From Convolutriloba macropyga (Eukaryota): a DNA stretch of 64,000 nt. This document shows positions 31,345 through 55,769 of this stretch, piece by piece. The notes below the pieces were generated by a model. That model did no database searches. It was given only the letters and a program-made list of their open reading frames with translations, and was not told where the DNA came from. Position 1 is the first letter of the stretch; the number at the start of each line of letters is the position of its first letter. A program made the translations under genes and the position numbers. The DNA lies in assembly GCF_964194025.1 (NCBI RefSeq), contig NC_134468.1:42594001-42658000 (forward strand), read 5' to 3'.

Positions 31345-31396
31345 GATAGCCTGTGACAAACAATATAATTTTAATTTCAAGTATTCGCATTGCCTA

Positions 31397-35513: not shown

Positions 35514-36567
35514 TCAAGAGGATGCCACCGCCCAGACGACCAAGTCAAAGAGCACCCCTGAATACGAATTCCCCAAACAGGAAAAAAGGCATGATTGATG
35601 ACGTAACTAAAGAGGAACGGGGTTTTTAAGGCTTAGACGTCGCACGAGCAAGAAGATCGCACGAGCAAAATACTTAACTACGCTAAATTCTTACCTTACT
35701 GGCCATGGAAAGAGATTAACCTGATAGAGCGTTACCCTTTGAACTTGTTACGGTGTAACTGCTTCTGATGAGTCTTCCATCAGGATCATAAACTAACAAA
35801 CGAAAATCCGTTTACTCTTAAGAGACCAAGAAAAATTTGACAAGTGAGTTAGTGAAATCAGCTAAGAAGCTTCCAGTAAAGTCCAATTTCCCATACTTGA
35901 ACTTGAAAAATATGGCACCAAAAAAAATTCGGAATGAAAACTGTCATATCCATACCAGAGCAGCTATTTTTTTTAAAATGCGCTGATATTCATTGATTTG
36001 AATGCCAAATTAATGGAGAAATTGCAGATTTTGTAAAATAAGGTTTCATTTTATGTGATGAAACGTATCTTTTCATGCAAATTGGCAGATTCTTTGCATA
36101 TATCCGCGGCACATGTCTTCCTGTGCCTAATTTAACGTCGACATAAAATTTCTGGTTGATGCCAATTTTTAAAATAAATTTTAAGCAACTCCTCTCAAAA
36201 ATAGTTTTGCATCATTGGTTATGTTTGTCTTCACAAAAATATCATCAACATTATAAATTCTAATGTTTTTGCTGCAGTTTGAGTTTCATACCTTTTTGAA
36301 AAGAAATCATTGCTTTAAAAACAAGGCAAGACTTTCCCAATGCCTTGAAAACTGTTGTTTGGTTCTTGGGAATTCAAATATCCTATGTTGACCTGGAAAA
36401 ATGTGGAAATCTAATTTATAGCGTTAACTTGGTGTGGATAACGCCCTGTTGGTTTTTCTTGTTTGACAACAGTCAAACATTGCAAGATACTTTCAAAACA
36501 GACAGAGTTCTTATATTTTCCCAACGGGAATAGACAATTTTGGAAGGAAGTAAAAATCTTAAGCCTT

Positions 36568-36731
36568 TGTAGTAATAGAGGCTGGCTAGAGGTATAACGG
36601 GGGCGGGGGTGACGGACATTTTTTGCAACATTTTTACAAAATTTGGCGTCCCTACCCGTTGTAAAAACGTCGTTGCAAAAATGTCCCCCCCCCCCCCCCC
36701 GTTGTACCTCTAGTCAGCCTCTATTACTACT
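36568..36731. mobile_element. 164-bp foldback MITE / solo hairpin with Polinton-like (T)GTAGT...ACTACT ends
   Basis: ~70-bp imperfect inverted arms (GTAGTAATAGAGGCTG...CAGCCTCTATTACTAC) around a ~20-nt loop; flanks AGCCTT / GGCCTC (4/6 match). Confidence 0.75.
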
Positions 36732-37479
36732 GGCCTCTTCCCTCAACTCCTGATATTTTCACAACAGTTTGACAATTTTGACAGTAGCAATCAAAGGCGT
36801 TTTCCCGTAGCTTCTGTTAAATGCCCGATGGAAGCTGGCAAATTAAGTGCGAGTTAACGGGGATAACAAAGCTCACAATATTTTTAGTATCAACCGTTTC
36901 GCGGCAATTGTATCAACCCGTTTCGCGGCAATTGCAACCAGGAATTTTAGATTAAACTCCATGGGTAGTGCATCCAACCAATCGAAATGCAAGATCTACC
37001 AACTTGGTCATTTATGCATCTCCTGAATAGCCCTTTCGAAGAGCCACGCACTGGAATTCTTCCAGCTTCCGTCGACGACATTTCAACACCAGTTAGTCAA
37101 AACGGTCTTCTCAATGATGCTACGAGTTTCTTGGAAAATAAAGTTGCAGTTTAAAGAGATACATAGCGTCTTGGTTTACCATGCTGAAAGAGACAGTAAC
37201 TCTTTGCTGATATAAGAAAAAAAATGGTTTTGAAGTACTAGTTCACATGATTTTTCATCTAGATTTTGTTGGCCATGTTGAGTTTTGATTTAATTTTCCC
37301 ACTCTTCCAAAAGAAGACTTGAGGCTTCAGAAACAGTATATCAAACCGTCAAAGTTATAAAAGCCGGCATTTTCGCCTCCCTGTTCAATAAATGTGTTGC
37401 AGTTGAAAAATTTGCACATGCGTTGTAACTCTTGTACGTGCGAAAAATTTGCACATGCGTCGAGGTGGCCAGACCGAAG

Positions 37480-38305
37480 TAACCTCTGATCAGAGCATCT
37501 TCGAGCGCACACTTGTTCTCGGTGCGCTCAAATTACTTGGTCTGGAAGAAACTTCGGGCGCACATTTGTCTGGACATTGGCCTGTAACTTGTCCGATCAG
37601 AGGTCTTTTCGGTATGGGACGGTCTGGCCAGAGGCAATTTGGAGCGCACACTAGTCTGATCAAAGGCTTATTCTAGCGCACGCTAGTCTGATCAGAGGCC
37701 GATTCAAGCGAATTCTTTCTTCAAGTTTTTTGGTCATTTTACTGACAGATATTGTCTCTGCCAAGAGTCAACAATACAGCAGCATTCTGATCAGAAACTT
37801 ATCGATAGTCTGATGGGTTGATCAGAAAGAAAGGGTCCAGCCGATAGCAATTACCTGTCCCATTGTGAGAAGCTCTGGAATAACTGTAGATCAAGACGTT
37901 ATTATGCAAAACTGTCTAAGTTTATCTATTCAGTCAAAAACATAAATTAATGGCATACTCAAAGAATTTTTTTGGCACGTGGGTTTTCTTTTCATTAGCA
38001 ATACTCTTAGAACTGGCTTTTCCTCAGTTGAATATGTTACTGAAAACATCAGTTTTCATGAAATTAATACATAATAACAATACTGAGAGAATTGATCGTT
38101 TTCAAATCCATTATCGGATCAGACTTTTTTGAACGCACTTTAGTCTGATCAGAGGCAACTTCGAGTGCACTTAAGTCTGATCATGGGCAATTTAGAGCGC
38201 ACTTCAATCTGATCAGAGGCAACTTCGAGCGCACTTCAGTCTGATCAGAGGAGGTTGTCGAGCGCTTTTTAAGCGCTCATGGAGCTCACTATAGTCTGAT
38301 CAAGT
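37480..38305. repeat. ~31-bp minisatellite-like repeats (TCTGATCAGAGGCAACTTCGAGCGCACTTCAG)
   Basis: About 5-6 tandem units at ~38130-38305 and degenerate units at ~37480-37710. Confidence 0.7.
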
Positions 38306-38511
38306 TAGTCGCAATTTTGATATGATTTTTGATCACATGTAAAAAGTAAATTCATGATGTAAAACTGATGTTGACGTTTGTAACCTGAAACTAAAACATG
38401 CTAAATCAACAAGTAAAGCTTAAACAGAAATAGAAAGTCAGAATACGACCAAGGAAAAGCCAACGTCGTGTTCAGAAGAGAGATACTATTTAAAAACTCA
38501 ATAAAACCTTT

Positions 38512-38640
38512 AGTAGTGGATAAAACAAGGGATTCAACCACCAGCAAAATTTGTCCCTTTCTCCTAACGCTAATCGTGCATGTCGAATCGGGCCAAATTT
38601 TACTGTTTGTTGAACCCCCTTGTTTTATCCACTACCATAT
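38512..38640 (+). repeat. Left TIR (itself a hairpin)
   Basis: Reverse complement of ~55398-55525 with ~4 differences; first ~49 nt pair with last ~49 nt. Confidence 0.95.
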
Positions 38641-39125
38641 TCACCACTATAAATACATACTACACGCACAACTTTGTGTACAAGAATGTACATAGCTAGT
38701 ATAATTTATGCAATTCATACACTAATATCCAAAAGTTCTCAAAGCTAGATTTAAGCCTAATTTCATATTTAATATGCCAAACTATACTGAAATAAATCAG
38801 GTTAATCATCTCACAAAGTTTTTTTTCAATAGAATCGGATGGATTGAAAATAACTCAAAATTGCGTAGAACTGGATAATAAGAAACAAGTTTCTTTAAAA
38901 TTTTGACTTTAACCAGGAGACGATTGATCTATGATGTTTAACTGAGTGATTCTATGTACCTGGTTACATTTTTGAGCCGAGTCTTGGGAGGTCTTGTTAA
39001 AAGGTTGACTCGTCTTTACCACGCTACGGCAGTACTGCTCGACCTTTCTAAATGGCAACTGTGGGGGAGGGTGCAACTACAGAATGCTTGAGGGTAGTCC
39101 AATATTGAATCTGTCCAATATTGAA

Positions 39126-39527
39126 TTAAATCTGTCCAATATTGAATGAACAAGCAGATAAATATTCCGGCACATTCACTTCAAACTTGTCCATTGTTTC
39201 CTGATGCTCGTAACTTAGTAGGTCCTTCTTGAACTTGGAGAGGAACAACTGGAAGAGTTCTGTTTTAGTTCGTTTTCCAGTCTCACTTTCATGTTCGGCG
39301 GTGTTGTCGGGTATGCATTTGTTCTCCTTACAAAATGTAATCATTTGATTTGTTAAATTAGTCAACTCGTTTATATTTTCTTCAGATAAAGAAGTGGATG
39401 ATAAAGCTCCAGTTATTAAAGTCTCGTCAAATGACAAAAATTGTTTAAAATTTTTCGCTAGTTCTTGTAGTGAAGTGAAACTCATGATGAATAGCCAAAA
39501 AATGCCGTGGAGAATAAAGGTCCCCAC
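39126..39527 (-). CDS. Polinton hypothetical protein
   Basis: 133-aa ORF (probable ATG at MSFTS) inside the element; no recognised motif. Confidence 0.45.
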   Translation of the reverse strand: MGTFILHGIFWLFIMSFTSLQELAKNFKQFLSFDETLITGALSSTSLSEENINELTNLTNQMITFCKENKCIPDNTAEHESETGKRTKTELFQLFLSKFKKDLLSYEHQETMDKFEVNVPEYLSACSFNIGQI

Positions 39528-39970
39528 GTGGAGAATTATTCTAGAACATTCTTTTTTCTAGAATATTTTGACATGATTTTTAAGTTAAAATTAGTTATCA
39601 TTTCCCAAGTAATTACATGTTTTAAAGTAAAATAATAATTAAATCCTTCTATTAAATTGAATGATTTGTATAATCTATTAAAAATTAAATTAAGATTTTA
39701 ATAAATACTCACTTTACTAGCTAATTTTTAAGGGTGACTTACATTCGAAATTTTCACTTGTTTTCATTCTGTTAGTGGTGGTGGCATTCTTTGTCAATGG
39801 CGGCGGCCATTTTAGCATGACATGCACTTTTCATTCGATCTGCTAAGCAGTGTAATGCGATGTTAAACCAAGCTGGTTGACTTCTTGTACTATTAGTGGT
39901 TGCTAAATATGAAAGAAAGCGAACAATAATAGCACAGTCAAAAACACTGAGATCGGTGGAAACACAGTGA

Positions 39971-40204
39971 TTAGTGTTTTTCTATGTCTTCTTGAATACT
40001 ATACTTATAAACATGCTCTCTGAACTGATTTCTTGTGTGACCATATCTATATCTATGAAGATAAATACATAGTCTACATTTCCTATTTCTAAATCTATAT
40101 AATGATATATGTTTATAAACATTACACATACTGCACGTTAGATATTGATCAGGATCAGAATAATGATATCCCAAATGTTCTATATAATCTTTAACCTTAA
40201 CCAT
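39971..40204 (-). CDS. Small Polinton CxxC...CxxC zinc-ribbon protein
   Basis: 77 aa, CSMC and CRLC; A-rich start context (AAAAATATG); divergent from pPolB. Confidence 0.55.
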   Translation of the reverse strand: MVKVKDYIEHLGYHYSDPDQYLTCSMCNVYKHISLYRFRNRKCRLCIYLHRYRYGHTRNQFREHVYKYSIQEDIEKH

Positions 40205-40345
40205 ATTTTTACATACATAACAAGAATATTCTAATTCTTAACAATTATTACAACATTCTTTCCAAGGTTTATTTATGCATTTATTGCATTTCATTTTCAT
40301 TTTTCGAAAAATTAATTTTTGATTATTTCCCTAAATAAATACATC

Positions 40346-43300
40346 ATGTCTCAATCAACTAATACTAGTGTCATAAACTTCTGCGATGTCTGTAATCTAT
40401 CCTTTGAATCAAAGAAGGGTTTATACAGACACCAATCTTATGATCTCAAACATAAGGAACTATTGGAGAAAATGTTTGAGTCTGAAGAAGAAGAAATCTT
40501 GGAGAGGGTGTATAATCCGGATGAAGATGAATATATTATTAAAACTAGGGCTAAAACTAAAACAGAAACTAAATCAGAAACTGAAACTGAAAACAATATC
40601 TATTCTAAGATTAGGTTTATATGTAAAGAATGTCATGAAGAATTTTGAATTAAAGTAGCTCTAACTACTCATTCATATAGTCACAATCGCATGTATCTAG
40701 AAAACACAGAAGACTTCGATATAAACTCAAGTCAGAACATGAGAGAATTTTATATTACTGATAAAGGTGGGAATTACATTGAAGAGATAGATCAAGCAAC
40801 TGATTACTCTTTAGAAGAAATTAAAAACTGTTACCAGTTTCGTAAAGTTAGGAGTTTTAAATATAAGATCACGGCTGAATGTGATTATAAGAAGAGAACC
40901 AAAGAAGAAGAAGTTAAAACTACTAAAATATTTTTCAATACTGATTATATTAATAATAATGCAATATATGAATATGGTGACTTCAATCGGTGGCTAGATT
41001 TCGAAAAGGAAATATATGAAGGTTATGGTTATGATTTTGAGTTTCTTGGAATAAGAAGTATTCAGTTAAACATTGAACCAAGTAAAGCATCTATTGGTAG
41101 TTATATAGATTTACCTCCTAATCTCAAAAACTCTAAATCGATATTAAATATACGTAGGTATAAATACAACTGCTTACAACTAACTATAACTGCTTGGCTA
41201 CATCCCGCCCCACACCATGCAACTCGAGAAAGTAAGTATGTAGATAAACTAATTGAACCAAGACAACAACATGAAGATGGGTATACACACCTTGTGGTAA
41301 TGGTAAAATAGAATTGTTTGAACAAGTGGATGATTTTAATAAAGATAGAAAAGATGTAAGAATACTAGTTTGGAGTAATGGTCAAATAGAACACTGTGCC
41401 CTAATAAAAAATATAGGAACCTTGTTAGAACGACCAAATAAAAACAACATTAAATATTATTATTGTGATAGGTGTACCTATTGGTTTAACTCACAAATTA
41501 AATATGATAAACACAAATGCAGCACCTCATTCAAACCAGAGATTGTTTGTCCTAAGAAAAAACATATTACTTTTGTAAATGAGCACAAACGTCAGAATAT
41601 AAAAAATATTATAACTGCCGATATAGAATGTTGCATTACCGATGTCACAACTAATGACTGTAAATTTGTAATAGCTGAACATATTCCAATAGCTGTGGGT
41701 TACACCTGGCAAGGTAACTTCAAACACTACTTCGGTCTAGGCTGCATCAAAAGATTTGCTAGAGATCTGTTAGAAATAGAAACTGAGAATATTTTCAAAC
41801 ATAATGAAAAGATGATATTCACAGAAGAAGATAAATTATATCATGAAACTAATAACACTTGTCATATCTGCAGCAAAACATGTATTAATAAAGTAAGAGA
41901 TCACTGTCATGAAACTGGTAAATAAAGAGGACCAGCATGTAAAATATGCAATCTAAGATACAAACAACAAAACTTCATTCCAGTAATTTTCCATAATGGC
42001 TCTGGCTATGACTTCAACCTACTATACAGTGAACTCTTTAAACAGAATAATGATAAAAGAAAAGTAGATAACATACCACTAGCTGCTGGTAAATCTAAGA
42101 TGTTTAGCATTGGTTGTCTCAAATTCTTAGACAGTTATAACTTCTTAGCTATGCCTCTAGATCAAATGGCAAAGATATACGGATGTAAAACTAAAACATT
42201 ATATCCATATGAATACTTTGGTTTAGACTCCTATAATAATCTTATAGGTAATCTAAAATTAGAAGACTTCAAATCCTCTCTCTCGAATAAATTACCAACA
42301 CAAGAAGAAGTCGATATCTTTAATAAAGCCAACAGTCATAAAACTGGAAAAGATCTAACTATAGAGTATTTACAGAATGATGTGGAAATTTTAGACTATT
42401 GCATGAATGAATATGTTAAACTAAGTATGAAAGAATTCAAGCTCAATCCACTACATTACGTTAGTCTCCCGGGTTATAGTTTTGATTGTTGGTTAATGTC
42501 AAGCGGTGTAACATTAGATACATTACAAGATAAACAAATGCTAGATGATTTTGTTGGAGCAAAGAGAGGTGTTATATGTGCAATAATGGGTGATAGATAT
42601 ATAGATAACAGTGATGGTAAGACCATATGGTACATAGACAACCTATATGGTTATGCAATGATGCAAAAGTTACCTTATAAGGACTTTCAGTTTACTACTA
42701 CTACTCTAGATCCACGAACGGACTTCGTCCGTGGCAAGCGAAGCGGTTTCCTCGATACAATATTGAATACTCCAGATGATAGTGATCATGGTTACTATAT
42801 AGTTTGTGATATTGATTATACTAATGAATTTAAAGAGAGAACAGAACAGTTAGCACTAATGCCTAATAAGAGAAAGATAAATGATAATGAATTGGGATAC
42901 CGACAAAGAGAGAAAAGTAAAGCAAGATCCGAGAAATTAATCTTAGACCAAAACAAAAAAACAGAATATATGGTTCATTATAGGATGTTAAAGTTCTATG
43001 CTAAGATGGGAGTAAAAGTAACAAAAATACATAGAGTAATTAAATTTTAACAAGACTACATATGTAGAGATTATATCCAAAACAACACTAACAAAAAAAC
43101 AACAGCTAAAACTGAAGCAGAGAAGGATGTAAGGAAACTAATGAACAACTCACTATATGGAAGAATGTGCATGAATCCCTTACACTTCTTTCAAAGCAAG
43201 TTCTTGCATGATGAAGAAAAGATAATGAAAAGTATAAGTAAACCAACATTTAAGAATATAACTAGATATAAGGATTATAGCCAAATTGAATATATAAAGA

Positions 43301-44019
43301 AAAAAATAGAATATGACTCTCCAGCATATGTAGGTGTTACTATATTAGAATTAAGTAATTTACACATGTATGATGTATTCTATAATATTCTACAACCATC
43401 TCTCAAAAATCTACAACTCCATTATATGGATACTGATAGTTTTGTATTAAGTTTTACTGAAGGTAATGTCGACAATGAACACATGGATTTAAGTAATCTA
43501 GAGCCCCCTATCAAAACAAATAATAAAGTGCCTGGTAATTTCAAACATGAAATGGGAAGTAAGATCATAGAAGAGTTTGTGGCCTTAACACCAAAGACAT
43601 ATAGCTTTAAAGATTATCCCAACAAAACTGAAGAGAAAGGAATAAAGAATTGTAACAATGCTAAACATGAGGAGTATTATAATGCACTAATGTATAACAC
43701 AGAGAGAAGTGTAGATGAATGTAGAATACAAAAAGTTGGTGATAACATGACAACAACAAAAACAAGTAAGATAAGTCTAAACACATTTAATGATAAAAAA
43801 TTTTATGTAAATAATATTAAAAGCTATCCTCATGATGAGAATCTATATCTATTCAAAGGAGATTTAATAAAAATGATCCGCCAAGCATCAGTGAAACTGC
43901 TTCGCAGATCATTAGATGGAGACAAAGACCTACTGGTTAATAATATTCTAGAACTAACCATTAATGATGATAGAAAGTTGATTGAAGTTGCTATTATATT
44001 ATATAATGAGCTTTGTTAA
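40346..44019 (+). pseudogene. Protein-primed family B DNA polymerase with N-terminal C2H2 fingers and HNH/EndoVII-like insert; disrupted
   Basis: ExoI ADIEC, RDHCHETGK*RGPAC..CN insert, ExoII FHNGSGYDF, ExoIII YLQNDV, Pol A YID-NLYGYAM, Pol B KLMNNSLYG, Pol C YMDTDS; in-frame stops at 40646, 41923, 43048 and a break near 41280-41314. Confidence 0.93.
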
Positions 44020-44035
44020 TTTTTATAACAAATAA

Positions 44036-44356
44036 TTATAGACCTAATTCATTCATTACTTCCATATGGTTGGTAGTTAGTATATTATAAATCATTATCT
44101 GAGCCATATATTTTTCCATAATGTCTCCCATGATTGTATTCTTATGTAGTGTAGCTCCAGCTATTATATTTTTTTTATATTCTAGAAATTTTATTATCTT
44201 CCCAGCCGCATCTACATATTTAGAATAAATTGAAATTCTTAAATCATCATGATTTGGTTCCTTAATATGATCAATAAACTCATCTATAGTATTACAATGT
44301 CTTTTACAAGCTAAACATTTTTTTAGATTAAGAGAGAAGCTGTTTTCATTATCCAT
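44036..44356 (-). CDS. Polinton hypothetical protein with CxxC...H...H zinc-finger-like motif
   Basis: 106-aa intact ORF, CLACKRHC..F..HIKEPNH; AAAAAATG start. Confidence 0.6.
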   Translation of the reverse strand: MDNENSFSLNLKKCLACKRHCNTIDEFIDHIKEPNHDDLRISIYSKYVDAAGKIIKFLEYKKNIIAGATLHKNTIMGDIMEKYMAQIMIYNILTTNHMEVMNELGL

Positions 44357-44392
44357 TTTTTACTCTTATTATAATTTTTCAATACATAAAAA

Positions 44393-46254
44393 ATGACTAA
44401 ACTAGATAAACTTATAGAATTAAACAATCTAGACAAACAAAACAGAAGAAATAGATTAGAAGATAAATTAAAACAACAAGAATATTATTGTGAAATAGAA
44501 GAGTTATTCGATCCTTTAACTAAAACTTTAAATGAAAACACTGAACGGAATCTAGCATTAGGTGAACAAACATTAAGAGCAATAGATTGGCAAAATCAAG
44601 AGTTAGATAAACAAACTAAGATGATCGAGCAAGCTGGTTCCCAGTTTAATGAAACTGCTTCCAAGATTGGTGAAACGTTAAAGGGGACTCAAGATATAGC
44701 ACCAGTTTTTGTAGATACAAAGACAGCCAAACTTCTTCATGACATGGGGGCTCAAACTAATCCTCAATTAAAATTAGAACTCATAGATTTACCTACTAGG
44801 AGATATAAAATGAATGGTGTTGATATAACTCTAGAGAAGAGTGCATTTTTAGTTAGGGATAATGTATATGAGTTTTCAGAAGGATTTACTGATTTTCTTA
44901 CTAAATCAATTGTAACATATGATGATAATATTGAGGAAGATGAAAACAAAATTAAAAGGTTTTTAAAGGATATTAGATATGATTTAGTAAAGGGGATAAG
45001 AAAAGCGGTAGATATAGAACAATAAAACGTATAATGGAGGTAAAAGATGACGTATTTGGCAGGGGTTTAAATAGCAACCCAAACCCAAATAGTTTAATAG
45101 AAAGATTAGAATTATTAATACTGGAAACAAAAGCTGGTCATGATGGATTATATGATAAAATGCTAGATGTATCTAAGCAACTATTATCTATGAATATTAT
45201 TAATCAAGACCAACAAGATAATTTTGTTTTTAACTACGGTAAAATAGGTGAAATCATGACTACGTCCATGAGCAAGCTCACAACTTCGTTGATCAGTGGA
45301 CCTGCTTTGCAGATAGGTGAAACCATGACTACATCCAAAAAAAATGTGGAAAAACAACAAAAACAACAACAACAACATCAACAACAACTAGCTAAAGAAG
45401 TAATCAGTCCTCAAATAACAAAGTTTAAAAGACAAAGAATAATACCACTATATAAAGATGAAACATGGTCAGCTGATTTAATTGATAAGTCATTTCTAAG
45501 TAAATACAATAATAATTATAAGTTTATATTAACAGTTATAGATATATTCACAAAATATGCATCGGCTATTCCATTAAAGAATAAATCTGGTTTATCTATA
45601 ACTAATGGTTTTAAAACAATCCTATCAGAAGGACGAAAACCAGAAAAGTTATGGGTAGATAGAGGTAGTGAGTATTACAATAAAACATTTATATCTTTAC
45701 TTAAAGAATATGAAACCGGCAAAGCCGCTTCAGGGATATAGCTATATTCTACTTATAGTGATTTAAAGGCTGTGTTTATAGAGAGATTCAATAGAACAAT
45801 ATTACATATAATAAATAAACCAATGTTCATCAATGGTGATGGTAATTGGGTAAATATATTAAATGATGCGGTCATAACATATAACAATAACATTCATTCA
45901 ACAACTAATATGACACCAGTTGATGCTTCTAATAATCCTGATAATGTTAAATACACTTTTAGTTTTAAGAATATTAAACCCAAACTTAACGTTGGTGATT
46001 ATGTTAGAAATGTAGATAAACGTAATATCTTCTCTAAAGGTTACGCTTCTAATTGGAATAGAGAATTGGTTAAAGTTAATGAAGTTCTAAAAACACAACC
46101 ACCAACTTATAAAATAGGAGATATTAATGGTGAGAAAATAGAAGGTAAATATTACGAACAGGAATTATTAAAATCTGAGTTTGATTTTGAATCTAATAAT
46201 AAAGTTTTAGAATCATTAAATATATTTCTTAAAATTAATAATGACAAGAAATAG
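44393..46254 (+). pseudogene. Retroviral-type (rve, DDE) integrase, probably fused to an upstream coiled-coil/core-like domain; one frameshift (~44990) and one stop (45739)
   Basis: WSADLID, VIDIFTKY, LWVDRGSEYYN, IERFNRTI catalytic motifs; C-terminal VGDYVR..KGY..NW..YYEQEL domain; upstream LFDPLTK and LIERLELL..KAG segments. Confidence 0.9.
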
Positions 46255-46951
46255 ATTCAATCAAGCTAAACATAAATCAACATCAACATCAACAAACAAC
46301 TTAACACTAAGTAAGGCTCCTGGGTTATTCCTAGAAGATAATGATGATATTGATATGAAGGATACCTATAAAATTACAAATGTTCATCCTCCTAGAGATG
46401 AAAAAGATGTTGTTAATAAAGAGTATTGTGACAATAACTTATTATCCTCTTCTAATAAAATAGACATTTTAAGTAGAAACATAACTGAACTAAGAAAGGG
46501 TGACTTTGATAAAGTTACAACTAAAACGTTACAACTAAATGAAACACAAGTTAATGAAGAACTAATTAATGGGTTTATTGAATCAACAAATGAAGTCAGA
46601 AATACTGTTAAGTTTTGTAATAAAGTTGCTGCAGATACTATCTCTAAATATAATTATTTGAAGCAAGAATTTGATAAGATTAAGTTTAATCAGAATATAA
46701 CTAACATACACTTAGATGAAATGTTTACTAACGGTCTGAGAGAAATGAAAGAATACAATAAATCTCTTAGAGGTGTTATAGTACAATATATAATTGCTAT
46801 ACTTTTACAAACTAAGTTACTTGATAATAAAGAGAAAGACAGACTTGAGATGCATTATAGTTTTAATCGAGAAGATATAATGAAAGAAATAGAAAGAATT
46901 TTTACTAATGAAAATCAGCAAAGCAATGACCAATCCAACAGCACCGAGTGA
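46241..46951 (+). CDS. Polinton protein with fibre-repeat-like motif
   Basis: DIDMKDTYKITNVHPPRDEKDVVNKEYCD resembles the D-A/V-x-N-K-x-Y-V-D fibre repeat; intact 236-aa ORF. Confidence 0.55.
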   Translation: MTRNRFNQAKHKSTSTSTNNLTLSKAPGLFLEDNDDIDMKDTYKITNVHPPRDEKDVVNKEYCDNNLLSSSNKIDILSRNITELRKGDFDKVTTKTLQLNETQVNEELINGFIESTNEVRNTVKFCNKVAADTISKYNYLKQEFDKIKFNQNITNIHLDEMFTNGLREMKEYNKSLRGVIVQYIIAILLQTKLLDNKEKDRLEMHYSFNREDIMKEIERIFTNENQQSNDQSNSTE

Positions 46952-47474
46952 GAGATTACTATATCCAGATTTGTCATCAGTATCAGAAAGATTAATAAAC
47001 GAAAAGATACAAGCTAATAATAAATTCAACAATAATATTAACATTATAAAAGATATTAGAAATTATTATAAAACTGAAACTAATAACTATAATAAGAAGT
47101 TAAGTAGATATAAGAATTATATTAACATAGCTGAGATAACAGAAATAGTATTATCATCAATAGCAACAACTGCAACAACAACATCAGTTTCATTAACATG
47201 TATAGGGTTAGCTTATTCTATACCAACAGCTTTTGCTACAGCAACTGTTTGTGGTTCATTATCAAAAACAATTAATACTAAAATTAGAAATAAAATTATA
47301 AAGTATTCACAAATGTATATTTCAAGTAAACAGTTTAGTGATAAATTTAATAAACTATATACTAAATCAATAAATGATAATAAAATAGATAATGATGAGT
47401 ATATTGATTTTGTTAAGTTATATGAGGATTATAAGAAGAATAAGAAAAACAGGCTGAGTATTTTTTTAGATTAA
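46926..47474 (+). CDS. Polinton helical/hydrophobic protein with N-terminal PTAP and LYPDL motifs
   Basis: MTNPTAPSERLLYPDL, coiled coil, then a ~45-aa uncharged stretch (IVLSSIATT...TVCGSL). Confidence 0.7.
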   Translation: MTNPTAPSERLLYPDLSSVSERLINEKIQANNKFNNNINIIKDIRNYYKTETNNYNKKLSRYKNYINIAEITEIVLSSIATTATTTSVSLTCIGLAYSIPTAFATATVCGSLSKTINTKIRNKIIKYSQMYISSKQFSDKFNKLYTKSINDNKIDNDEYIDFVKLYEDYKKNKKNRLSIFLD

Positions 47475-47608
47475 AGATATTAGTGCTTAGTAATAACAAT
47501 GTTTTTAGTTATAATAATATTAGTATTAATATTTATCGATAAATATATAATCATAATCTTAGTTATAATCATAATCATAAACATAATATAATCATAATAT
47601 AATCATAA

Positions 47609-48064
47609 TCATAAACATAATATAATCATAATTATAATCAAATAATTATCTTTTTTTGTACCTAAGTATAACCCTCTTCCTTTTTGTACTAATTTTATAC
47701 CTTCACCAGTAGTTGCAAATTTAATTAAATCAGGTTTGGCTGCTAAAGCAGCTCTAGGGTTTCTAGATGCAGCTGCACTTCCTATTTTACTTGCTATTTC
47801 TAATGCTCTTACTGGATTATGAGCTGCCTTCTTTCCAAAGTTAACTGTAGCCCTAACAACACTTTTAAAGAAATCTTTAAGTACTTCTGCTTCTATTGTT
47901 GCATCAGATACTGTCATTGATTTATTCCTTCTACATAAAACACAATTACCTTTTAACATCTTAGTTTCTTTTGAAGTAATAGCTCCTCTTATATTAACAG
48001 AACCACTGTAATGTCTACCTCCAACACAATATGAATTAGTTTTGAACTTATTTAAAAGACTCAT
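47609..48064 (-). CDS. Putative virion core/membrane-active protein (zinc ribbon + amphipathic helix + GxG motifs)
   Basis: YC....H...GNCVLCRRNKS zinc-ribbon-like N-terminus; LKDFFKSVVRATVNFGKKAA amphipathic helix; GEGI and KGRGLYL. Confidence 0.65.
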   Translation of the reverse strand: MSLLNKFKTNSYCVGGRHYSGSVNIRGAITSKETKMLKGNCVLCRRNKSMTVSDATIEAEVLKDFFKSVVRATVNFGKKAAHNPVRALEIASKIGSAAASRNPRAALAAKPDLIKFATTGEGIKLVQKGRGLYLGTKKDNYLIIIMIILCL

Positions 48065-48082
48065 TTCTATATATAAAAAATA

Positions 48083-48244
48083 ATGGAAGTTAAAAAGTAT
48101 AATCCCTTTGTTGTTATTAAGCCTAAGCCTACGGGTTCCACCCGCGAGCGAAGCTCGAAGACTGAGCCTAAGCCTAAGGTTAAGCCCAAGCCCAAGGTTA
48201 AGCTTGAAGCTAGAGGCTTGGCTCTAGAGAATAAAAAAAATTAG
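48083..48244 (+). CDS. Small basic KP-repeat peptide (possibly frameshifted)
   Basis: MEVKKYNPFVVIKPKP...EPKPKVKPKPKVK; TATATAAAAAATAATG start context; below ORF-track cutoff. Confidence 0.35.
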   Translation: MEVKKYNPFVVIKPKPTGSTRERSSKTEPKPKVKPKPKVKLEARGLALENKKN

Positions 48245-48496
48245 ACATTATTTATGCTAAAGGTTTTGTTAATACTAATAAGAAATAGTTAGGTATTAAC
48301 AAGAGTAACAATTAGAGCTGACTAGCTATAAATATAAGTATAAGTATATGGTTATGTATAAGTATTAGTATATAATTATAACAATAACTATATTATACTA
48401 TAATTATAAATTATCGCTAGAGTTATATCTAAAATTATAATTATCGCTAGAGTTATATCTATGATATACCTTCACCTTATATCTATGATATACCTT

Positions 48497-49901
48497 CTAC
48501 GAGATTATATCAACCATCTTAATACCATCACTATTCACACTAATAACCTTCCTAGTTAATACTAATGCATGACATATAACATCTGCAACTGCAGCACTAA
48601 ATTTAAAATTAAGTTGTATTGGTTGTTGTTGTACACACCATGATATATCTCTAATTTCTATATTACCATCATTGGCAACTGCACCAGGATTAGCATTAAC
48701 TCTATATAGAGCTCTATCATTATTATTCCTTTTTAATTTTAGTTTAAATCCTAAACCATATATAAGCTTTTCTAAATCATTTACGAAACCAAATAGATCA
48801 CTTTGATATCGAGTATCAAATACATATATTCTATAACTACTCTTGAATGTTCTATGATTTATATATGGTTTTTTATTATGTGGTAGCCCATTATAGTCTT
48901 TATTAAAGCTAACAATCTCTTTAAAAGCATCATTATAATTATTAGTTCCATAATTAATATTTATTCTATCCTCGGGATAAAAACCCACTACCAATCTTAC
49001 AATAACATTCAGTAACATTCATTACATCAAATGTACTTGCATCATGAGTTAGCTCATTAACATTATTATTTTCAAAACCAACTATAATATATTGTGGTCT
49101 TTCCATACCACTTTCCATACCTAGATCAAACAAGAAGTTAGTAGCATTGGGTACATTCTTATAAAATGTCTTCCTTTCATAATAACTAAAGTCTACATTA
49201 TTCTTTTTATTCAAAACCCTTTTGCACAATAATTCTATTGTCATTACTAGGATCAATACTAGGTACACAACATGATATATCTCTAATTTCTATATTACCA
49301 TCATTGGCAACTGCACCAGGTTTAGCATTAACTCTATATAGAGCTCTATCATTATTATTCCTTTTTAATATTAGTTTAAATCCTAAACCATATATAATCT
49401 TTTCTAAATCATTTACGAAACCAAATAGATCACTCATTCTTAATCATCATATACATATGTCCTCGTTGTGCAGCAATATGGTCACCTCTAAGTTGACTAT
49501 CTCTATTGCCCTGATTTCTAACAAAACCACTCATATTCATCACCAGTACTAGTTAATAATTTATATATCAATAGATTGGGATGACAATGATCTATATATT
49601 CAATAGTCCTACCACCACTAGTCTCAAGTTTAATTGAACTGAATAATGCCATCATACCATAATTAACTAATCTAATATCAGCAAATATCATTAGCAAATA
49701 CACCACCAGCATAATCTGATACAACTCTATCTCTAGATTTGAATCACGCAAATTTAGGTGACTCTCTTCTCTATTGAGTATGATATTAATATTGGTATTA
49801 ACCGTATTCATTGTTGCTAGATTATTAGGTTTATATTTTATAATCTTACTTTTATGTATATCATTATTATAACCATAAGTTGTATCCAAATTAAAATCCA
49901 T
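48497..49901 (-). pseudogene. Major capsid protein (double jelly-roll), frameshifted, with a 172-bp internal duplication
   Basis: Collinear fragments: LVNYGMMALFSSIKL..IEYID; LFGFVNDLEKIIYGLGFKLIL.RNNND; PQYIIVGF..STFD; YPED; IYVFDTRYQ; PIQLNF..HALVL. These match the Polinton/adintovirus MCP pattern. Confidence 0.82.
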
Positions 49902-49917
49902 TTTTATTAGATAAAAA

Positions 49918-50759
49918 ATGAGAGACAATTTAATGTTAAGAGAACTACAAAATATACACGAAGCTTTAACTGAAACTAAAGAAGAGTATACACTTAACTT
50001 TAGAATGATAAAACTAACAGAAAAGTTTAACTTTAGTGAACCTATACTTAATACAACAAAATTAGGTTCAATTAGATTATCTGTTTATAATTCGGTGTTT
50101 AATGTGAATAGGAGAAATAATCAATTCTTATATGCTAGTACTGTTATAGAAGATGATGAAGCTTTACCTCGGGTTCTCAGCTCTGTTCCTAACCTTAACC
50201 CTATCTCTACCTCAAGCCCAAACATTAAATCTATACTTAACCATAATTATAAAGGAATCCCGTTGCTATATTCAACTATTACACCGGGAGCATATGAGTT
50301 AACTGACATAGCAGAATTAATAAAAGAAGAAATTGATGGTAATGTTGTAATAGAACCTGATAAGAATACGATGAAATGTTTAATGGAAATAAAACAAGGA
50401 GCACTCAGCTTTGATATAGAAAACTCACTAGCCTCATTCTAGGATTTGGAAAAATAATTTATAAAAAAGGTAGATATAAATCTCAGAAAATTATTGATAT
50501 TATGGGTTTTAGTACTATTAACATTCATTGTAATGTGATATCTGGAGCTAAAGATAATGGTAAAGATACAGACATACTATATACTTTTAATCTAACTGAA
50601 CCACCAGGTTACTTGATAAATATAATACCAACTATTATCTTGTATCAAAATGTAAATAAAGATAGAATAGAATATATAGAATTTCATATTAAAGATGAGC
50701 ATGGAAGACCTATAGACTTTAATGGTGATGTATTAAGTTTTACTTTACATTTGATTTAG
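49918..50759 (+). pseudogene. Minor capsid protein (penton, single jelly-roll), one frameshift ~50440
   Basis: YNSVFNV..NNQF, ITPGAYEL, LGF, INIHCNVISG, PPGYLI..P..Y, DEHGRPIDFNG motifs. Confidence 0.85.
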
Positions 50760-51005
50760 ACTTATACTTATACTTACACTTAGACTTATCTGTGAAGCAG
50801 GTTCCCTGATACTTATACCTATAGTTATTTGCGAAGCAGGTTCCCGATACTTAGACTTGTACTTAGACTTACACTTATCTGCGAAGCGGGTTCCCTGATA
50901 CTTAAACTTATACTTATCTGCGAATCAGGTTCCCGATACTTAGACTTGTACTTAGACTTACACTTATCTGCGAAGCGGGTTCCCTGATACTTAAACTTAA
51001 ACTAA
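50760..51005. repeat. Convergent intergenic array: hexamer repeats alternating with 25-bp GCGAAGC-hairpin units
   Basis: (ACTTAG/ACTTAT)n interleaved with 5 copies of TATCTGCGAAGC(A/G)GGTTCCC(T)GATA. Confidence 0.8.
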
Positions 51006-51006
51006 A

Positions 51007-52395
51007 CTACAAAACTCTCCGATCCCAATTAATTCTTAGTTTACCATTAACATTTTTATTTTTAGTTATATCAATGACAATATAATTATAAGGCTCTTTC
51101 CATACCTTATTACATATATTAGCAAAATCGTTATAACTAAGTTCAACATTATTAAAGAAATCTTGATATATAGATATGAGGACTTTACCTCTCTGTTCAA
51201 ATAAAATAAATAGATTACAGTTCCCTCTAACACTCTGCCTATCCAGAGAGAACAGGTTTTGATTAAGATATATCATATTACAGTTATTATGTCTACCTCT
51301 ACAAAAGTATTCATTAATAACTGGTTCTTTGGCTCTAACATCATCGAATATCATTAGTTTCTTTAAGTCTTTGGGTAGTTTATCGGGAGATGGCAAATCT
51401 TTTATATCTTTAATAAATTCAACATCTGCTTTTGGGTTTATTCTTTCTATACCATGGTACTGATCACCAGTAGGTCCAATGATGTATAGCTTATCAAAGT
51501 ATATACTAGCTAGAATTAGTTTTTTCAATAAGAATGTCTTACCACATTCACTAGGACCAGATATTATACATCTAAAGTTATCTGGGAATGCGGCTTCAGT
51601 AATTATATCATCATCATTTAACCATAAATATAGATCATCATTTATGTTTACAAATATCGGTGAAACCGCTTCACGGATATTATTAGTAGGACTATTACTA
51701 ATGCTATTACTATTTCTATCCCTATTAGATTTACTCCTTTGATATTTTTCATCAAATAGATATATAAAATTATCATTATCATTATCATTATCATTATCAA
51801 TGACATTATCCTTATCATTAACATTATCATTATCATTAACATTATCATTATCATTACTAGTAAAGCTACTTCGTAGATCATTAACATTATCATTAACATT
51901 ATCCTTATCTTTATCACCACCTCTACTACAACTTAAACAAGAACACTCATTATATATTCCTGGATATTTACATTGATTAACTAGAATATTCAAAGCACTT
52001 TTAATTCTAAATCCTCTATCAATAAGATAGATCATATATAAACAATAAGCCCCACAATAAGATTCATCATATTGTTGTATTCCCTCATTAGAGCCTAGAT
52101 CAACATATTCTTCTAAAAATAAAGGTGGAGTTTCTACACCAAAACTATCAAAGTAATATGTTGGACCACCTTCTCTTCTTATAACTAAAACGCAATGTGT
52201 ACCTTCAGTTGGATGTAGATTTACAATAATGTTAGAGTTAGGTTCACTTACCATTTCTGGTTTATCATCTCTCATTACAATCTCAATAGGTGTTAGACTT
52301 ATATCTTTACCTATATCTTTTATTCTGATACCACTCATAGCATTATTATCAATATTAAATTTATTATTGAATTCCACAAAAGTTAGGATGAGCAT
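51007..52395 (-). CDS. Adenain-like cysteine protease fused via a DN-repeat linker to an A32/FtsK-like packaging ATPase
   Basis: Protease GTH, YFDSFG, IQ..SYCGAYC; ATPase Walker A GPSECGKT, Walker B LMIFDD, RGRH, LNQ, VRGN; uninterrupted 462-aa ORF. Confidence 0.9.
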   Translation of the reverse strand: MLILTFVEFNNKFNIDNNAMSGIRIKDIGKDISLTPIEIVMRDDKPEMVSEPNSNIIVNLHPTEGTHCVLVIRREGGPTYYFDSFGVETPPLFLEEYVDLGSNEGIQQYDESYCGAYCLYMIYLIDRGFRIKSALNILVNQCKYPGIYNECSCLSCSRGGDKDKDNVNDNVNDLRSSFTSNDNDNVNDNDNVNDKDNVIDNDNDNDNDNFIYLFDEKYQRSKSNRDRNSNSISNSPTNNIREAVSPIFVNINDDLYLWLNDDDIITEAAFPDNFRCIISGPSECGKTFLLKKLILASIYFDKLYIIGPTGDQYHGIERINPKADVEFIKDIKDLPSPDKLPKDLKKLMIFDDVRAKEPVINEYFCRGRHNNCNMIYLNQNLFSLDRQSVRGNCNLFILFEQRGKVLISIYQDFFNNVELSYNDFANICNKVWKEPYNYIVIDITKNKNVNGKLRINWDRRVL

Positions 52396-52479
52396 TTTTA
52401 TATAATAAATTTATTAAATCTAAGTCTAATTATAAGTCTAAGTCTAAATCTAAATCAAATCTATATTTATTATATAAAA

Positions 52480-54230
52480 ATTGAAACAGGTAGTGCAGTT
52501 TTTGTTTTTATTATTATAATTGGCATTTGTTATATAATATATGATTCAATACCAAGTAAATATACAAAACTAGAAGAAAGCTTTGGTGGATTTATGAATA
52601 GGAGTCTAGTTAGATTTGAATATGAAAAGTCACCACTACATACTTTTGTTTATGGTGGAACTGGAACGGGTAAAACATATTTTATTAGACAATACTTATA
52701 GTTATACTTAGACCATGATCAAGTTCAAAATCAAGTTCAAGATCAAGTTCAACATCAAGTTCAAGATCAAGATCAAGTTCAAGATCAAGTTCAAGATCAG
52801 GTTCAAGATCAAGTTCAACATCAAGTTCAAGATCAAGATCAAGTTCAAGATCAAGTTCAAGATCAAGTTCAACATCAAGTTCAAGATCAAGTTCAAGATC
52901 AAGACCAAAGGTCCATAGTTATAGTTTGTAAAGATGACAGAGACTGGATAGATCCTGAGTCTAATAAGTTTTATACTGGGTTTAATAAATGTGATATAAA
53001 TATGATCACAAAAAATAATATGCATAAGTTTCAAAATTGTGTAATAGTACTTGATGATATGGGTGACAGGTTAAATAAGGATATAGCTTATTATATTGCT
53101 GAAGGTAGACATTATAATTTTCAAATGATTGTAATGTGTCATAAACCAGCTCAAATAATTAATACAGCAAGAATGAGTTGTGATACTATTTACCTAACAA
53201 CTTATAATGGACCTGACCTATTTAAAAACTTTAATGAGATATATAAATTTGAAATGACTTCAATAAAATAATTAGTGAATTAAATAGTAACTATTATAAT
53301 TGTACAGATGGAATGTCAGATGAACTTCGCTATGGTATAATTAAATATAATAAAAAGGAAAATACTTTTATTATTATTAGTAATAATAGAACAATGATAT
53401 ATGATTCAAGAGTTGGTTTCCTTGATTTAAAAGCTCTTAGTTTAAAAGATGATTTAGAAAGAGAAGATATAAATAAACTTATAGCATATATGATGATTAA
53501 TGCAACAGATAGAAATGTTATTAATCATGATAATTATCAGTTTTATTTTAATAAACTTCTTACTTTAAAAAATATTAAAATTCAGAATGATGTTTTAACA
53601 AAAGAGATGATTAAGGGAAATGGGTATGAAAATTTTATCAAATATTGGTGGAATTATAGGCACAGGTTTATTTATATTTAATTGTTTTTATCCTGATTCA
53701 ATATCAAGAAATGCTGGAACTGTAGCAATGGGAGCAAGTACAATGTTGAGTAGAGTAAATACATTAGTTAATGTTGGATATGGAGAAGAGTTGGAAGGTG
53801 AAACACGAACAAAGTCCGATTCTTCGATCTGCGAAGCAGGTTCCATGATCCAAGAGGAATATATCGATCGGGGAAGCAGTAATACTGATCAGGGAAGCAG
53901 TTATACTGTGTAACTGTGACTTCGTATCAGCGTAACTGTGACTTCGTCAATGAAGAGATGGGAATTTTGAATAGAAAGGGAGGAAAGTTTTTAAACAAAC
54001 TATATATAAATAATGAAGAATTTAGAGAAGAGATTATAAATTTTGTTAAAGATAAAAAAGACTTAGACCTTGATTTGATCTTAGATAAGAGATGTAAAAC
54101 TAATACACTCAATACTTTAGGAAATAAATATTTAGCAGAGTTTATCACATCTAAAGATAATACTAAAGATTTAATTGAAATCATGGCTAAATATTATCCA
54201 CAAAGTTTGTACACCGATTCTACAGCATAG
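52480..54230 (+). pseudogene. Second A32-like ATPase with N-terminal hydrophobic anchor, DQVQ repeat insert and long C-terminal extension; disrupted
   Basis: Manual translation from 52480 (ATT in the ATG position after TTATATAAAA): ETGSAVFVFIIIIGICYIIY...VYGGTGTGKT, stop at 52699, (DQVQ)n, in frame with VIVLDDMG..EGRH..MCH..TARMS (53002-53271); downstream fragments linked by frameshifts (inferred). Confidence 0.75.
52717..52908. repeat. 12-bp/6-bp tandem repeat GATCAAGTTCAA (encodes DQVQ)
   Basis: Directly visible; preserves the ATPase reading frame. Confidence 0.95.
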
Positions 54231-54347
54231 CTAATATTATCTGCGAATTTGCAAAACAACTCAGTTGAGCAGTTTGGTAAACCATGAACAAAGTTCGTTC
54301 GAGAACCACGAGCAAAGCCCAATCACTGATAATTTTATCTATTAAAA

Positions 54348-55199
54348 ATGCTTTTACAATGTTTAGAGTGTAACTATAAATGTGGAAACATTGCTGTTTT
54401 AAAATATTATTATGAATCATTTCATAAAGATAAAACTGATAAATGCATGTGTGGTAATATAATATTAAGTGGCATTTGTGCTAATGATTTTTCCCCATGG
54501 GGTTGTTCTTTAAAAAATGAATCTAGTTCTAGTTCTAATTCTAGTTCTAACTCTAGTTCTAATTCTAATTCTAATTCTAGTTCTAACCCTAGTTCTAGTT
54601 CTAACCCTAATTCTAACTCTAGTTCTAACCCTAGTTCTAGTTCTAGTTCTAGTTCTGGTTCTGGTTCTAACCCCAGTTCTAGCTCTAGTTCTGGTTCTGG
54701 TTCTATCTATGACTATAACTCTTACTCAGATCCTAACCCTAACCCTAACCTTATCCCTAACCCTAACTTTAACCCCAGCTCAGAAGTATTAACTAGATGC
54801 TGTAATAAGTGTAATTATATAAAACCACTAAATAATTTTGATGAGGGTAAGTAAACATGTAGAAGTTGTACTTCAGCTAAAGTTAATTGTCCATATTGTA
54901 CTTCTGTTGTGAGATATGATGGGATATGGGCTCATGTAAAGAAACAACATCCAGATATAGAATTGACTAGAGGATTTAGTAGAAATATAACTGATCGGTG
55001 TAACCGCTTCGCGGATAAAACAATTAATCCTAGTTGCCCAAGTCCTAGAGCTGTAAGTCCTTTAGTTAATAACCAAACAGAGGAAAATTGTTCATGTAAA
55101 TACTATAATTTTGTATCATTTCTTATTAATAATGGAATAAATATAGAAAAAATAAAAGAAAATATAAATTTATTGAAAAGTATAGATAATTTGAAATAA
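54348..55199 (+). pseudogene. Cys-rich multi-zinc-finger protein with S/N/P hexamer-repeat linker; one in-frame stop at 54852
   Basis: CLEC, CMC, CNKC, then read-through TCRSC..CPYC...HVKKQH in the same frame as 54909-55199. Confidence 0.65.
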
Positions 55200-55397
55200 A
55201 AAGTATAAAAAATAAAAAATGTCAAAAAAGAAGGATTCACTCTTTAAGAGCGAAAAAGAGCGATCTTTTCTACTGGGGATCACTCCGAATAAGAGTGAAT
55301 CACTCTTAAAGAGTGAAATGTAAATTTTGCTTTAATTTTTTGATTTTTTGTTTTTTTTTTGATTTTAATTGATTTTTTTATTGAATTTAGAGCTAAT

Positions 55398-55525
55398 ATA
55401 TAGTAGTGGATAAAACAAGGGATTCAACAAACAGTAAAATTTGGCCCGATTCGACATGCGCGATTAGCGTTAGGAGAAAGGGACAAATTTTGCTGGTGGT
55501 TGAATCCCTTGTTTTATCCACTACT
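55398..55525 (-). repeat. Right TIR (itself a hairpin AGTAGT...ACTACT, 55402-55525)
   Basis: Inverted copy of left TIR; followed by TSD ACCTTT. Confidence 0.95.
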
Positions 55526-55769
55526 ACCTTTGATTTCATAATGAAAAAGTTTTGAAGAAGGTTAACATAAGATGACATGCCCTAGTTCAACTCCAACTAT
55601 TATCTTGCAAGTTCTGGCAAGATTTATGCCTTTGATCGTTAGCTTGCAAGATCGTGCCACGAATTTTTCAAGACTCAATCTTGCTTATGATTAGGCACAA
55701 TCTTGCGACACAACAGTCGGTTTTTGACTATTGTTAATTGTTGATAGTATGCTTTAAACATGCTTTCAC

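What the first reader, a model, noticed from the sequence alone, without database searches (positions are those of the whole stretch)
36562..36737. Solo 164-bp hairpin with Polinton-type ends and degenerate 6-bp TSD: candidate solo TIR of a sister family
Seen: a foldback with ~70-bp arms, ends TGTAGTAATAG...CTATTACTACT (one change from AGTAGT...ACTACT) and flanks AGCCTT/GGCCTC. It has the same architecture as one TIR of the neighbouring Polinton but an unrelated internal sequence. Inference: this is the product predicted if hairpin-TIR Polintons leave solo TIRs or spawn integrase-mobilised MITEs. Its CCT-centred target also resembles ACCTTT.
Basis: partly seen in the sequence, partly recalled or inferred. 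Interest (0 to 1): 0.75.

Follow-up and report, generated by a model that had tools for sequence, protein, structure and literature searches.

The report
Lone foldback with Polinton-type ends
A 164-base non-coding hairpin in an acoel worm chromosome has the end motif typical of Polinton (Maverick) virus-like transposons and sits 1.8 kb from a complete one, so it is probably a leftover or miniature Polinton end, but only this one copy could be examined.

Summary
Window 36568-36731 is a strong imperfect foldback (DNA fold -61 kcal/mol, z -14.5).

The window is chromosome OZ077299.1 of the acoel Convolutriloba macropyga, an animal. The neighbour at 38512-55525 is a real Polinton/Maverick:
- It has a perfect 6-bp target duplication.
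- It carries pPolB, rve integrase, double-jelly-roll capsid and ATPase-like genes.
- Its two ~124-nt terminal units are each a self-contained foldback.

- **For:** the 3' hexamer of the hairpin is the published commonest Maverick end motif, and the 5' hexamer differs from it by one base. The only three compact foldbacks with such tips in 64 kb are this one and the two Polinton terminal units. The flanks match 4/6 and share a CCT core with the neighbour's duplication.
- **Against or open:** there is no internal similarity to the neighbour's terminal repeat, the duplication is degenerate, and TA or 8-bp readings remain possible. No second copy was found in anything I could search.

The decisive tests are genome-wide copies, their duplications, and whether pairs enclose Polintons. 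None was possible: no tool searches this genome's DNA.

The parts
36568..36731 (.).
36569..36609 (+). Outer left arm of the inverted repeat
   Evidence: 41 nt, 93% complementary to 36690-36730
36690..36730 (-). Outer right arm of the inverted repeat
36685..36700 (+). C16 homopolymer in the right arm, paired with an interrupted G run in the left arm. It reads C17 in a second assembly of the same locus.
36562..36567 (.). Left flank, candidate degenerate 6-bp target duplication
   Evidence: 4/6 identical to 36732-36737, P = 0.06 for one test. An alternative register, 36563-36568 against 36733-36738, matches 5/6.
36732..36737 (.). Right flank, candidate degenerate 6-bp target duplication
38512..55525 (+). 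Neighbouring Polinton/Maverick, 17,014 bp
   Evidence: Terminal repeats 97% identical (121/125); Pfam hits
38506..38511 (.). Left copy of the neighbour's perfect 6-bp target duplication
55526..55531 (.). Right copy of the neighbour's perfect 6-bp target duplication
38512..38636 (+). Left terminal unit of the Polinton, itself a foldback
   Evidence: The fold used a range cut 9 nt short.
55402..55525 (-). Right terminal unit of the Polinton, itself a foldback (47-nt arms 91% complementary, 32-nt loop)
   Evidence: In one search, 55401-55525 folds at -47.2 kcal/mol, z -13.3.
42100..43050 (+). Stretch matching protein-primed DNA polymerase B (PF03175)
   Evidence: E 2.9e-10
45034..45741 (+). Open frame with rve integrase core (PF00665)
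   Evidence: E 2.2e-7; 1071 relatives at E <= 1e-5
48497..49268 (-). Double-jelly-roll major capsid gene, interrupted
   Evidence: PF21738 is matched by two reading frames within these bounds
51007..52395 (-). 462-aa open frame with a weak P-loop/helicase match

Best explanation
The hairpin is a lone terminal unit of Polinton type. It is a non-coding foldback whose two tips are the end motif that Polinton/Maverick elements present to their integrase and to protein-primed replication, and it comes from a lineage other than the neighbour's.

Shown: the foldback, the tips, its non-coding nature, its solitude within 64 kb, and the fact that in this genome a Polinton terminal repeat is a self-contained foldback with the same hexamer at its outer and inner edges.

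Inferred: how it came to stand alone. Two routes give the same product (duplication - unit - duplication).

(a) Loss in place. A palindromic terminal unit is both an inverted and a direct repeat of its partner. In the neighbour the two units are 97% identical in inverted register and 77% in direct register, and a 25-nt direct stretch differs at one position. Recombination between the two units of a full element could therefore remove the 17-kb interior and leave one unit, as solo LTRs arise.

(b) Insertion as a miniature element. One foldback unit carries two correct ends, so an integrase of a related Polinton could insert it with a 6-bp duplication.

I put about 0.55 on the Polinton-type origin overall and cannot rank (a) against (b). 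The changed first base, the 2 mismatches in the duplication and about 21% arm divergence fit an old, inert copy.
For: Foldback. Tips: the 3' hexamer is identical to the neighbour's and the 5' hexamer matches at 5/6. The motif and the 6-bp duplication are conserved Maverick features (PMC8097293). Only three foldbacks with such tips exist in the window, and the other two are the Polinton's terminal units. They are also the strongest compact inverted repeats in the window. Similar imperfect palindromy: 78.8% for the hairpin against 73.4% and 79.4% for the Polinton units. Flanks 4/6 with a CCT core, as in the neighbour's duplication. The direct-register homology between the neighbour's two units, which makes route (a) possible. 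The genome is rich in Polintons: 1071 integrase relatives at E <= 1e-5. Mavericks make up 4.5% of the genome of a related acoel (PMC6451197).
Against: Only one copy was seen. There is no significant internal similarity to the one Polinton terminal repeat available (P = 0.24). The first base breaks the motif and the inverted symmetry. The duplication is degenerate (4/6, P = 0.06 alone). A TA...TA reading and an 8-bp reading (5/8, P = 0.05) are also available. The 5' end also fits the TGTNR pattern of Ginger and Gypsy ends. No open frame in a 15-billion-protein collection, which includes frames called on an assembly of this species, shares three 5-residue words with either of two translations of the hairpin. 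This is a weak sign that the family is not abundant.
Confidence: 0.55

Rival explanations
1. It is a miniature inverted-repeat element of an ordinary cut-and-paste superfamily (Tc1/mariner-like with a TA duplication, hAT-like with 8 bp, or Ginger-like with TGTNR ends), and its tips resemble the Polinton motif by chance.
For: TA lies on both sides at 36570-36571 and 36728-29, with only one further complementary pair outside it. The 8-bp flanks on the same diagonal match 5/8 (P = 0.05). The 5' end fits TGTNR. There is no internal similarity to the neighbour's terminal repeat. Size and shape are typical of such elements.
Against: The chance that the tip of an unrelated foldback carries GTAGT is about 0.001-0.003 (51 occurrences in 64 kb). 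The TA lies inside the inverted repeat, so it follows from the motif itself. The Ginger reading needs a 4-bp duplication, and the 4-bp flanks match 0/4. The 3' end is not ...ACA.
Confidence: 0.22
2. It is a local palindrome that never moved, made by a template switch or an inverted duplication during replication or repair.
For: Single copy in everything searched. Long G and C runs suggest replication slippage, and the C run differs by one base between two assemblies.
Against: This does not explain why the palindrome ends exactly on the Polinton end motif, nor the matching flanks with a CCT core. The arms have diverged by about 21%, so it is not a recent artefact. It is present in two independent assemblies.
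Confidence: 0.12
3. It is the left end of a larger, older Polinton that hosts the neighbour as a nested insertion and ends beyond the window.
For: An older element of about 17 kb plus a 17-kb insertion would end near 70.6 kb, outside the 64-kb window, so the missing partner is not in itself an argument against this.
Against: The stretches that would be its interior (36732-38505 and 55532-64000) show no similarity to any of the neighbour's 96 stop-free stretches or to its DNA. 58-64 kb is a 937-bp tandem array. The 232-aa frame at 55675-56373 has no Pfam match.
Confidence: 0.03

Closest known systems
Polinton/Maverick terminal inverted repeats with the (AGT)2//(ACT)2 end motif and a 6-bp target duplication (Kapitonov & Jurka 2006 as cited in PMC8097293; Barreat & Katzourakis 2021)
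   Same: Tips (11 of 12 motif positions), a possible 6-bp duplication, and the same foldback build as the terminal units of the Polinton 1.8 kb away.
   Different: No genes between the ends. The total length is 164 nt, against 12.7-24.6 kb for intact vertebrate elements. The internal sequence is unrelated to the neighbour's repeat. Published terminal repeats (46-1,447 bp) are not described there as palindromic units; 'hairpin' and 'palindrom' occur nowhere in that paper.
Solo LTRs of LTR retrotransposons (established knowledge)
   Same: On route (a), a single terminal unit with the original duplication is left after recombination between the two terminal units of one element.
   Different: LTRs are plain direct repeats. 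Here the direct-register homology exists only because each unit is a palindrome, and it is weaker (77% in the neighbour). I found no report of solo Polinton ends: the one paper holding both 'Polinton' and 'solo TIR' concerns Galileo.
Miniature inverted-repeat elements (for example the piggyBac-derived 'piggyMITE' in bioRxiv 10.1101/2025.02.07.637071)
   Same: Small, non-coding, inverted ends, foldback potential, presumed dependence on an enzyme encoded elsewhere.
   Different: Such families are defined by many copies and a consistent duplication, and neither could be tested here. The putative parent is a virus-like self-synthesising element rather than a cut-and-paste transposon. For Anolis, Polintons were reported with an 'apparent absence of nonautonomous copies' (PMC3014272).
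Foldback-type elements such as Galileo/Foldback of Drosophila (PMC3573991, seen; not read in full)
   Same: Long inverted arms and the occurrence of solo terminal repeats.
   Different: Those belong to the P superfamily, with kilobase-long, internally repetitive arms. No sequence comparison was made.

Membership tests
Polinton/Maverick (as a gene-less derivative or lone terminal unit) | Conserved 6-nt end motif, (AGT)2 at the 5' end and (ACT)2 at the 3' end | tested here: met
   The 3' end at 36726-36731 is exact. The 5' end at 36568-36573 matches at 5 of 6, with the first base changed. The motif is taken from PMC8097293 and from the neighbour at 38512-38517 and 55520-55525.
Polinton/Maverick (as a gene-less derivative or lone terminal unit) | 6-bp target site duplication | tested here: inconclusive
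One copy only.
Polinton/Maverick (as a gene-less derivative or lone terminal unit) | Terminal sequence shared with a gene-carrying Polinton of the same genome | tested here: not met
   Against the only Polinton in the window there is no similarity beyond the hexamer (P = 0.24). Other Polinton families of the genome were not examined (step left out).
Polinton/Maverick (autonomous element) | pPolB, rve integrase, capsid and packaging genes between the ends | tested here: not met
   164 nt with no such coding capacity. No Polinton remnants in the flanks.
Miniature inverted-repeat element (generic) | Short, non-coding, terminal inverted repeats | tested here: met
Miniature inverted-repeat element (generic) | Many dispersed copies with a consistent duplication | not testable with these tools
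   No tool searches this genome's DNA. There were 0 further copies in the window, 0 in the viral and metagenome collections and 0 in two word searches of translated frames.
Ginger | TGTNR...YNACA ends with a 4-bp duplication (PMC2836005) | tested here: not met
   The 5' end fits TGTNR but the 3' end is not ...ACA. The 4-bp flanks 36564-36567 and 36732-36735 match 0/4.
Tc1/mariner-type miniature element | TA duplication | tested here: inconclusive
   TA is present on both sides (36570-71 and 36728-29) but lies inside the inverted repeat.
hAT-type miniature element | 8-bp duplication | tested here: inconclusive
   5/8 for bounds 36569/36730 (P = 0.05). 1/8 if the element is taken to start with TAG at 36570.

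The most novel reading that the evidence does not exclude
In this acoel, the terminal repeats of Polintons are modular foldback units that also exist on their own. They would form a family of 120-165-nt gene-less elements that carry the Polinton end motif, are flanked by 6-bp duplications, and arise by solo-LTR-like loss of the interior and/or by insertion as miniature elements. That would be the first documented miniature or solo derivative of a virus-like self-synthesising transposon, and it would serve as a marker of past Polinton insertions.
Probability: 0.3. Interest if true: 0.65.

Novelty: new variant of a known kind. Interest (0 to 1): 0.4.

Why it matters
Polintons/Mavericks are large virus-like elements whose insertion and loss are poorly tracked once their genes decay. 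Most vertebrate copies are eroded, and many lack recognisable terminal repeats (PMC8097293). If lone terminal units are a regular product, they would record past insertions, as solo LTRs do for retrotransposons. They would also explain part of the 'unclassified' repeat fraction in Maverick-rich genomes such as acoels (Maverick 4.5% and unclassified 20.4% in P. naikaiensis; PMC6451197). They would further show that the palindromic build of a terminal repeat affects element turnover. As it stands, the evidence is one old copy.

Tried and rejected
1. Other copies in the window: a 3-mismatch pattern search and a word-7 blastn found none.

2. Exact-pattern scans of the viral and metagenome collections, using a 24-nt arm pattern and a two-ended gapped pattern, gave 0 hits. 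These collections are not expected to hold acoel DNA, so this says little.

3. Finding copies through called open frames: two stop-free translations of the hairpin had no candidates in the word search. In the one locus of the ENA assembly seen (L003) few frames were called in its non-coding DNA, so this test is insensitive.

4. Rfam and tRNA scans of the window gave nothing, so the hairpin is not a known structured RNA gene.

5. Polinton remnants beside the hairpin: none. That rejects a truncated or nested sister element.

6. Similarity of the hairpin interior to the neighbour's terminal repeat: not significant. The multiple alignment is forced outside the hexamer.

7. Empty-site allele: not attempted further. 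The only other assembly reached (L003) is 99.7% identical and holds the hairpin. Its contig name gives 66x coverage, close to the whole-genome 64x, which suggests a collapsed or homozygous locus; this is inferred from a name only.

8. Exact look-up of the 462-aa frame was not on record.

Two points need disclosure. First, looked up the window's own integrase frame before I knew the host was an animal. It returned the same locus, neighbour Polinton included, from another assembly (L003). I used it only and made no further look-ups of Polinton genes. Second, the tblastn table labels its queries with the bounds of stop-free stretches of the Polinton. I did not interpret any of these as breaks, and none is repeated here.

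Full report
**Source.** Two host open frames of the window (12548-14899 and 24131-25345) are found exactly on OZ077299.1 of assembly GCA_964194025.3. That puts the window at 42,594,001-42,658,000 of the chromosome. The genome note for this accession names the acoel Convolutriloba macropyga, with a 1.18-Gb assembly, 3.65% heterozygosity and an alternate haplotype deposited separately (PMC13650328). The host is therefore an animal, and the neighbouring element is a virus-like element of an animal. The window holds no N.

**The observation.** The sequence at 36562-36737 is as described.
- The outer arms 36569-36609 and 36690-36730 are 93% complementary over 41 nt.
- Over the whole 164 nt, the two halves align at 78.8% with a few short gaps.
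- As single-stranded DNA it folds at -61.2 kcal/mol, against -19.9 +/- 2.9 for shuffles (z -14.5).
- G+C is 49% against 38% in the surrounding 3.5 kb, largely because of an interrupted G run paired with a C16 run (36685-36700).
- It has no coding capacity beyond short chance frames, and no Rfam or tRNA match.
- It is the only copy in the window on either strand.

**The neighbour.** The element at 38512-55525 (17,014 bp) is flanked by a perfect 6-bp duplication at 38506-38511 and 55526-55531.
- Pfam finds a protein-primed polymerase B stretch, an rve integrase core, a double-jelly-roll capsid domain and a weak P-loop match in a 462-aa frame. A weak A32-type packaging ATPase mark is on record for a frame near the right end.
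- Several genes are interrupted. The capsid profile is matched in two reading frames, so there is at least one frame change. The polymerase match covers only part of the profile, in a 316-aa frame among other same-strand frames, so there is at least one interruption, and introns are not excluded. I did not resolve these further and give no positions.
- The two terminal units (38512-38636 and 55402-55525) are 97% identical in inverted register (121/125).
- Each unit is itself a foldback. The right one has 47-nt arms at 91% complementarity and a 32-nt loop, and 55401-55525 folds at -47.2 kcal/mol (z -13.3).
- Each unit carries the same hexamer at its outer and inner edge, with one change at the inner edge of the left unit.
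- Because the units are palindromic, left and right units also align in direct register at 77% (97/126), and a 25-nt direct stretch differs at one position.

**What links the hairpin to Polintons.**
1. **End motif.** The last six bases of the hairpin are identical to the last six of the Polinton. The first six differ at the first base only. This hexamer is not a local oddity. (AGT)2//(ACT)2 is reported as the commonest conserved end motif of vertebrate Mavericks, found with perfect 6-bp duplications and thought to serve the jumping-back step of protein-primed replication (PMC8097293).
2. **Rarity of such tips.** A scan of the window for foldbacks tipped by GTAGT...ACTAC returns exactly three: the hairpin and the two Polinton units. 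These are also the strongest compact inverted repeats in the window. GTAGT occurs 51 times in 64 kb, so an unrelated foldback would end on it about once in 400-1,000 cases, allowing a base of slack.
3. **Similar palindromy.** The degree of imperfect palindromy is alike: 78.8% for the hairpin against 73-79% for the Polinton units.
4. **Flanks.** The flanks match 4/6 and share a CCT core with the neighbour's duplication. Only 0.01% of window position pairs at that spacing show both properties. This statistic was chosen after seeing the data and rests on a single reference duplication. The 4/6 on its own has P = 0.06.

**What does not link them, or stays open.**
- The interior of the hairpin has no significant similarity to the neighbour's terminal unit (P = 0.24), and the alignment is forced outside the hexamer. 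It is therefore not a derivative of this Polinton family.
- Whether a 'sister family' with this terminal sequence exists was not tested.
- The bounds are not fixed by one copy. A register shifted by one base gives 5/6 flanks. An 8-bp reading gives 5/8 (P = 0.05). A TA...TA reading is available because the motif itself contains TA.
- The changed first base makes the 5' end fit the TGTNR pattern of Ginger and Gypsy ends. However, the 3' end is not ...ACA and the 4-bp flanks match 0/4.
- The flanks hold no Polinton remnants, so the hairpin is not the stump of a truncated element or the edge of a nested one.

**Mechanism.** I take the hairpin to be a lone Polinton-type terminal unit (confidence 0.55). 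Two routes lead to the same structure.
- **Loss in place.** The palindromic build makes the two terminal units of one element partly direct repeats. Recombination between them would delete the interior and keep one unit between the original duplication, as in solo-LTR formation.
- **Insertion as a miniature element.** One unit has two correct tips and could be handled by a related integrase.

Both routes are inference, and nothing here separates them. The changed tip base, the two mismatches in the duplication and the arm divergence suggest an old, inert copy. Rivals are an ordinary miniature element with chance resemblance (0.22), a non-mobile local palindrome (0.12) and the end of a larger nested element (0.03).

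**Context.** The window's integrase frame has 1071 relatives at E <= 1e-5, all from ENA assemblies. The window's own locus is one of them. Mavericks make up 4.5% of the genome of the related acoel Praesagittifera naikaiensis (PMC6451197). Polintons are thus abundant in this lineage, which raises the prior for Polinton-derived debris.

- The indirect way would have been to look up integrase relatives and read the ends of their elements. I left this out. Once the host proved to be an animal, I could not tell whether the bar on fetching a virus of animals by look-up covers endogenous Polinton copies. The literature in the library calls them bona fide viruses (PMC4028283).
- Before the host was known, one search had already returned the window's own locus from another assembly (L003). 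That locus is 99.7% identical and has the hairpin with C17 instead of C16.

**Verdict.** A Polinton-type lone end is the most likely reading, but it rests on a 6-nt motif, a shared architecture and a degenerate duplication in a single copy. Interest is moderate (0.4). It would rise if a genome-wide census showed a family of such units.

Noticed in passing
window 38512-38636 and 55402-55525: Each terminal repeat of the Polinton is a self-contained ~124-nt foldback with the end hexamer at both its outer and inner edge. The two units are therefore both inverted (97%) and direct (77%) repeats of each other. The papers I read do not describe Polinton terminal repeats this way.
   Followed up: partly
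window 37469-38300: A cluster of 32/64-nt repeats built around a TCTGATCAGAGG-type palindromic core, in direct and inverted orientation, lies between the hairpin and the Polinton. It may be another small repeat family or the subterminal repeats of an unrelated element.
   Followed up: no
window 58039-64000: A tandem array with a period of about 937 bp and at least six units runs off the end of the window.
   Followed up: no
window 11-2099 and 6159-7025: Satellite arrays with a period of 351-358 bp (about 75% matches) lie inside a roughly 4.9-kb tandem duplication (2676... against 7596..., 95-98% identical).
   Followed up: no
window 28668-35018: A roughly 4.16-kb tandem duplication (97-100% identical) carries sulfotransferase (PF03567) exons. 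The annotated 400-aa sulfotransferase gene on the minus strand extends at least to 35345, so the hairpin may lie in its upstream region or in an intron.
   Followed up: no
window 52686-52932, 54468-54789 and 50760-51003: Inside the Polinton there are 12-nt and 18-nt in-frame-like repeat runs and an 89-nt repeat (2.7 copies, 92% matches).
   Followed up: no
window 45034-45741: The integrase frame has more than 1000 relatives in ENA assemblies. Many are 85-94% identical over only about half of the query, which points to a very large, recently active Polinton population in this or closely related genomes.
   Followed up: no
L003 (ENA ERZ25071359, contig ctg37354_66x_l): A second assembly of the same locus differs from the window at about 0.3% of positions, including the length of the C run in the hairpin (17 against 16).
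   Followed up: partly
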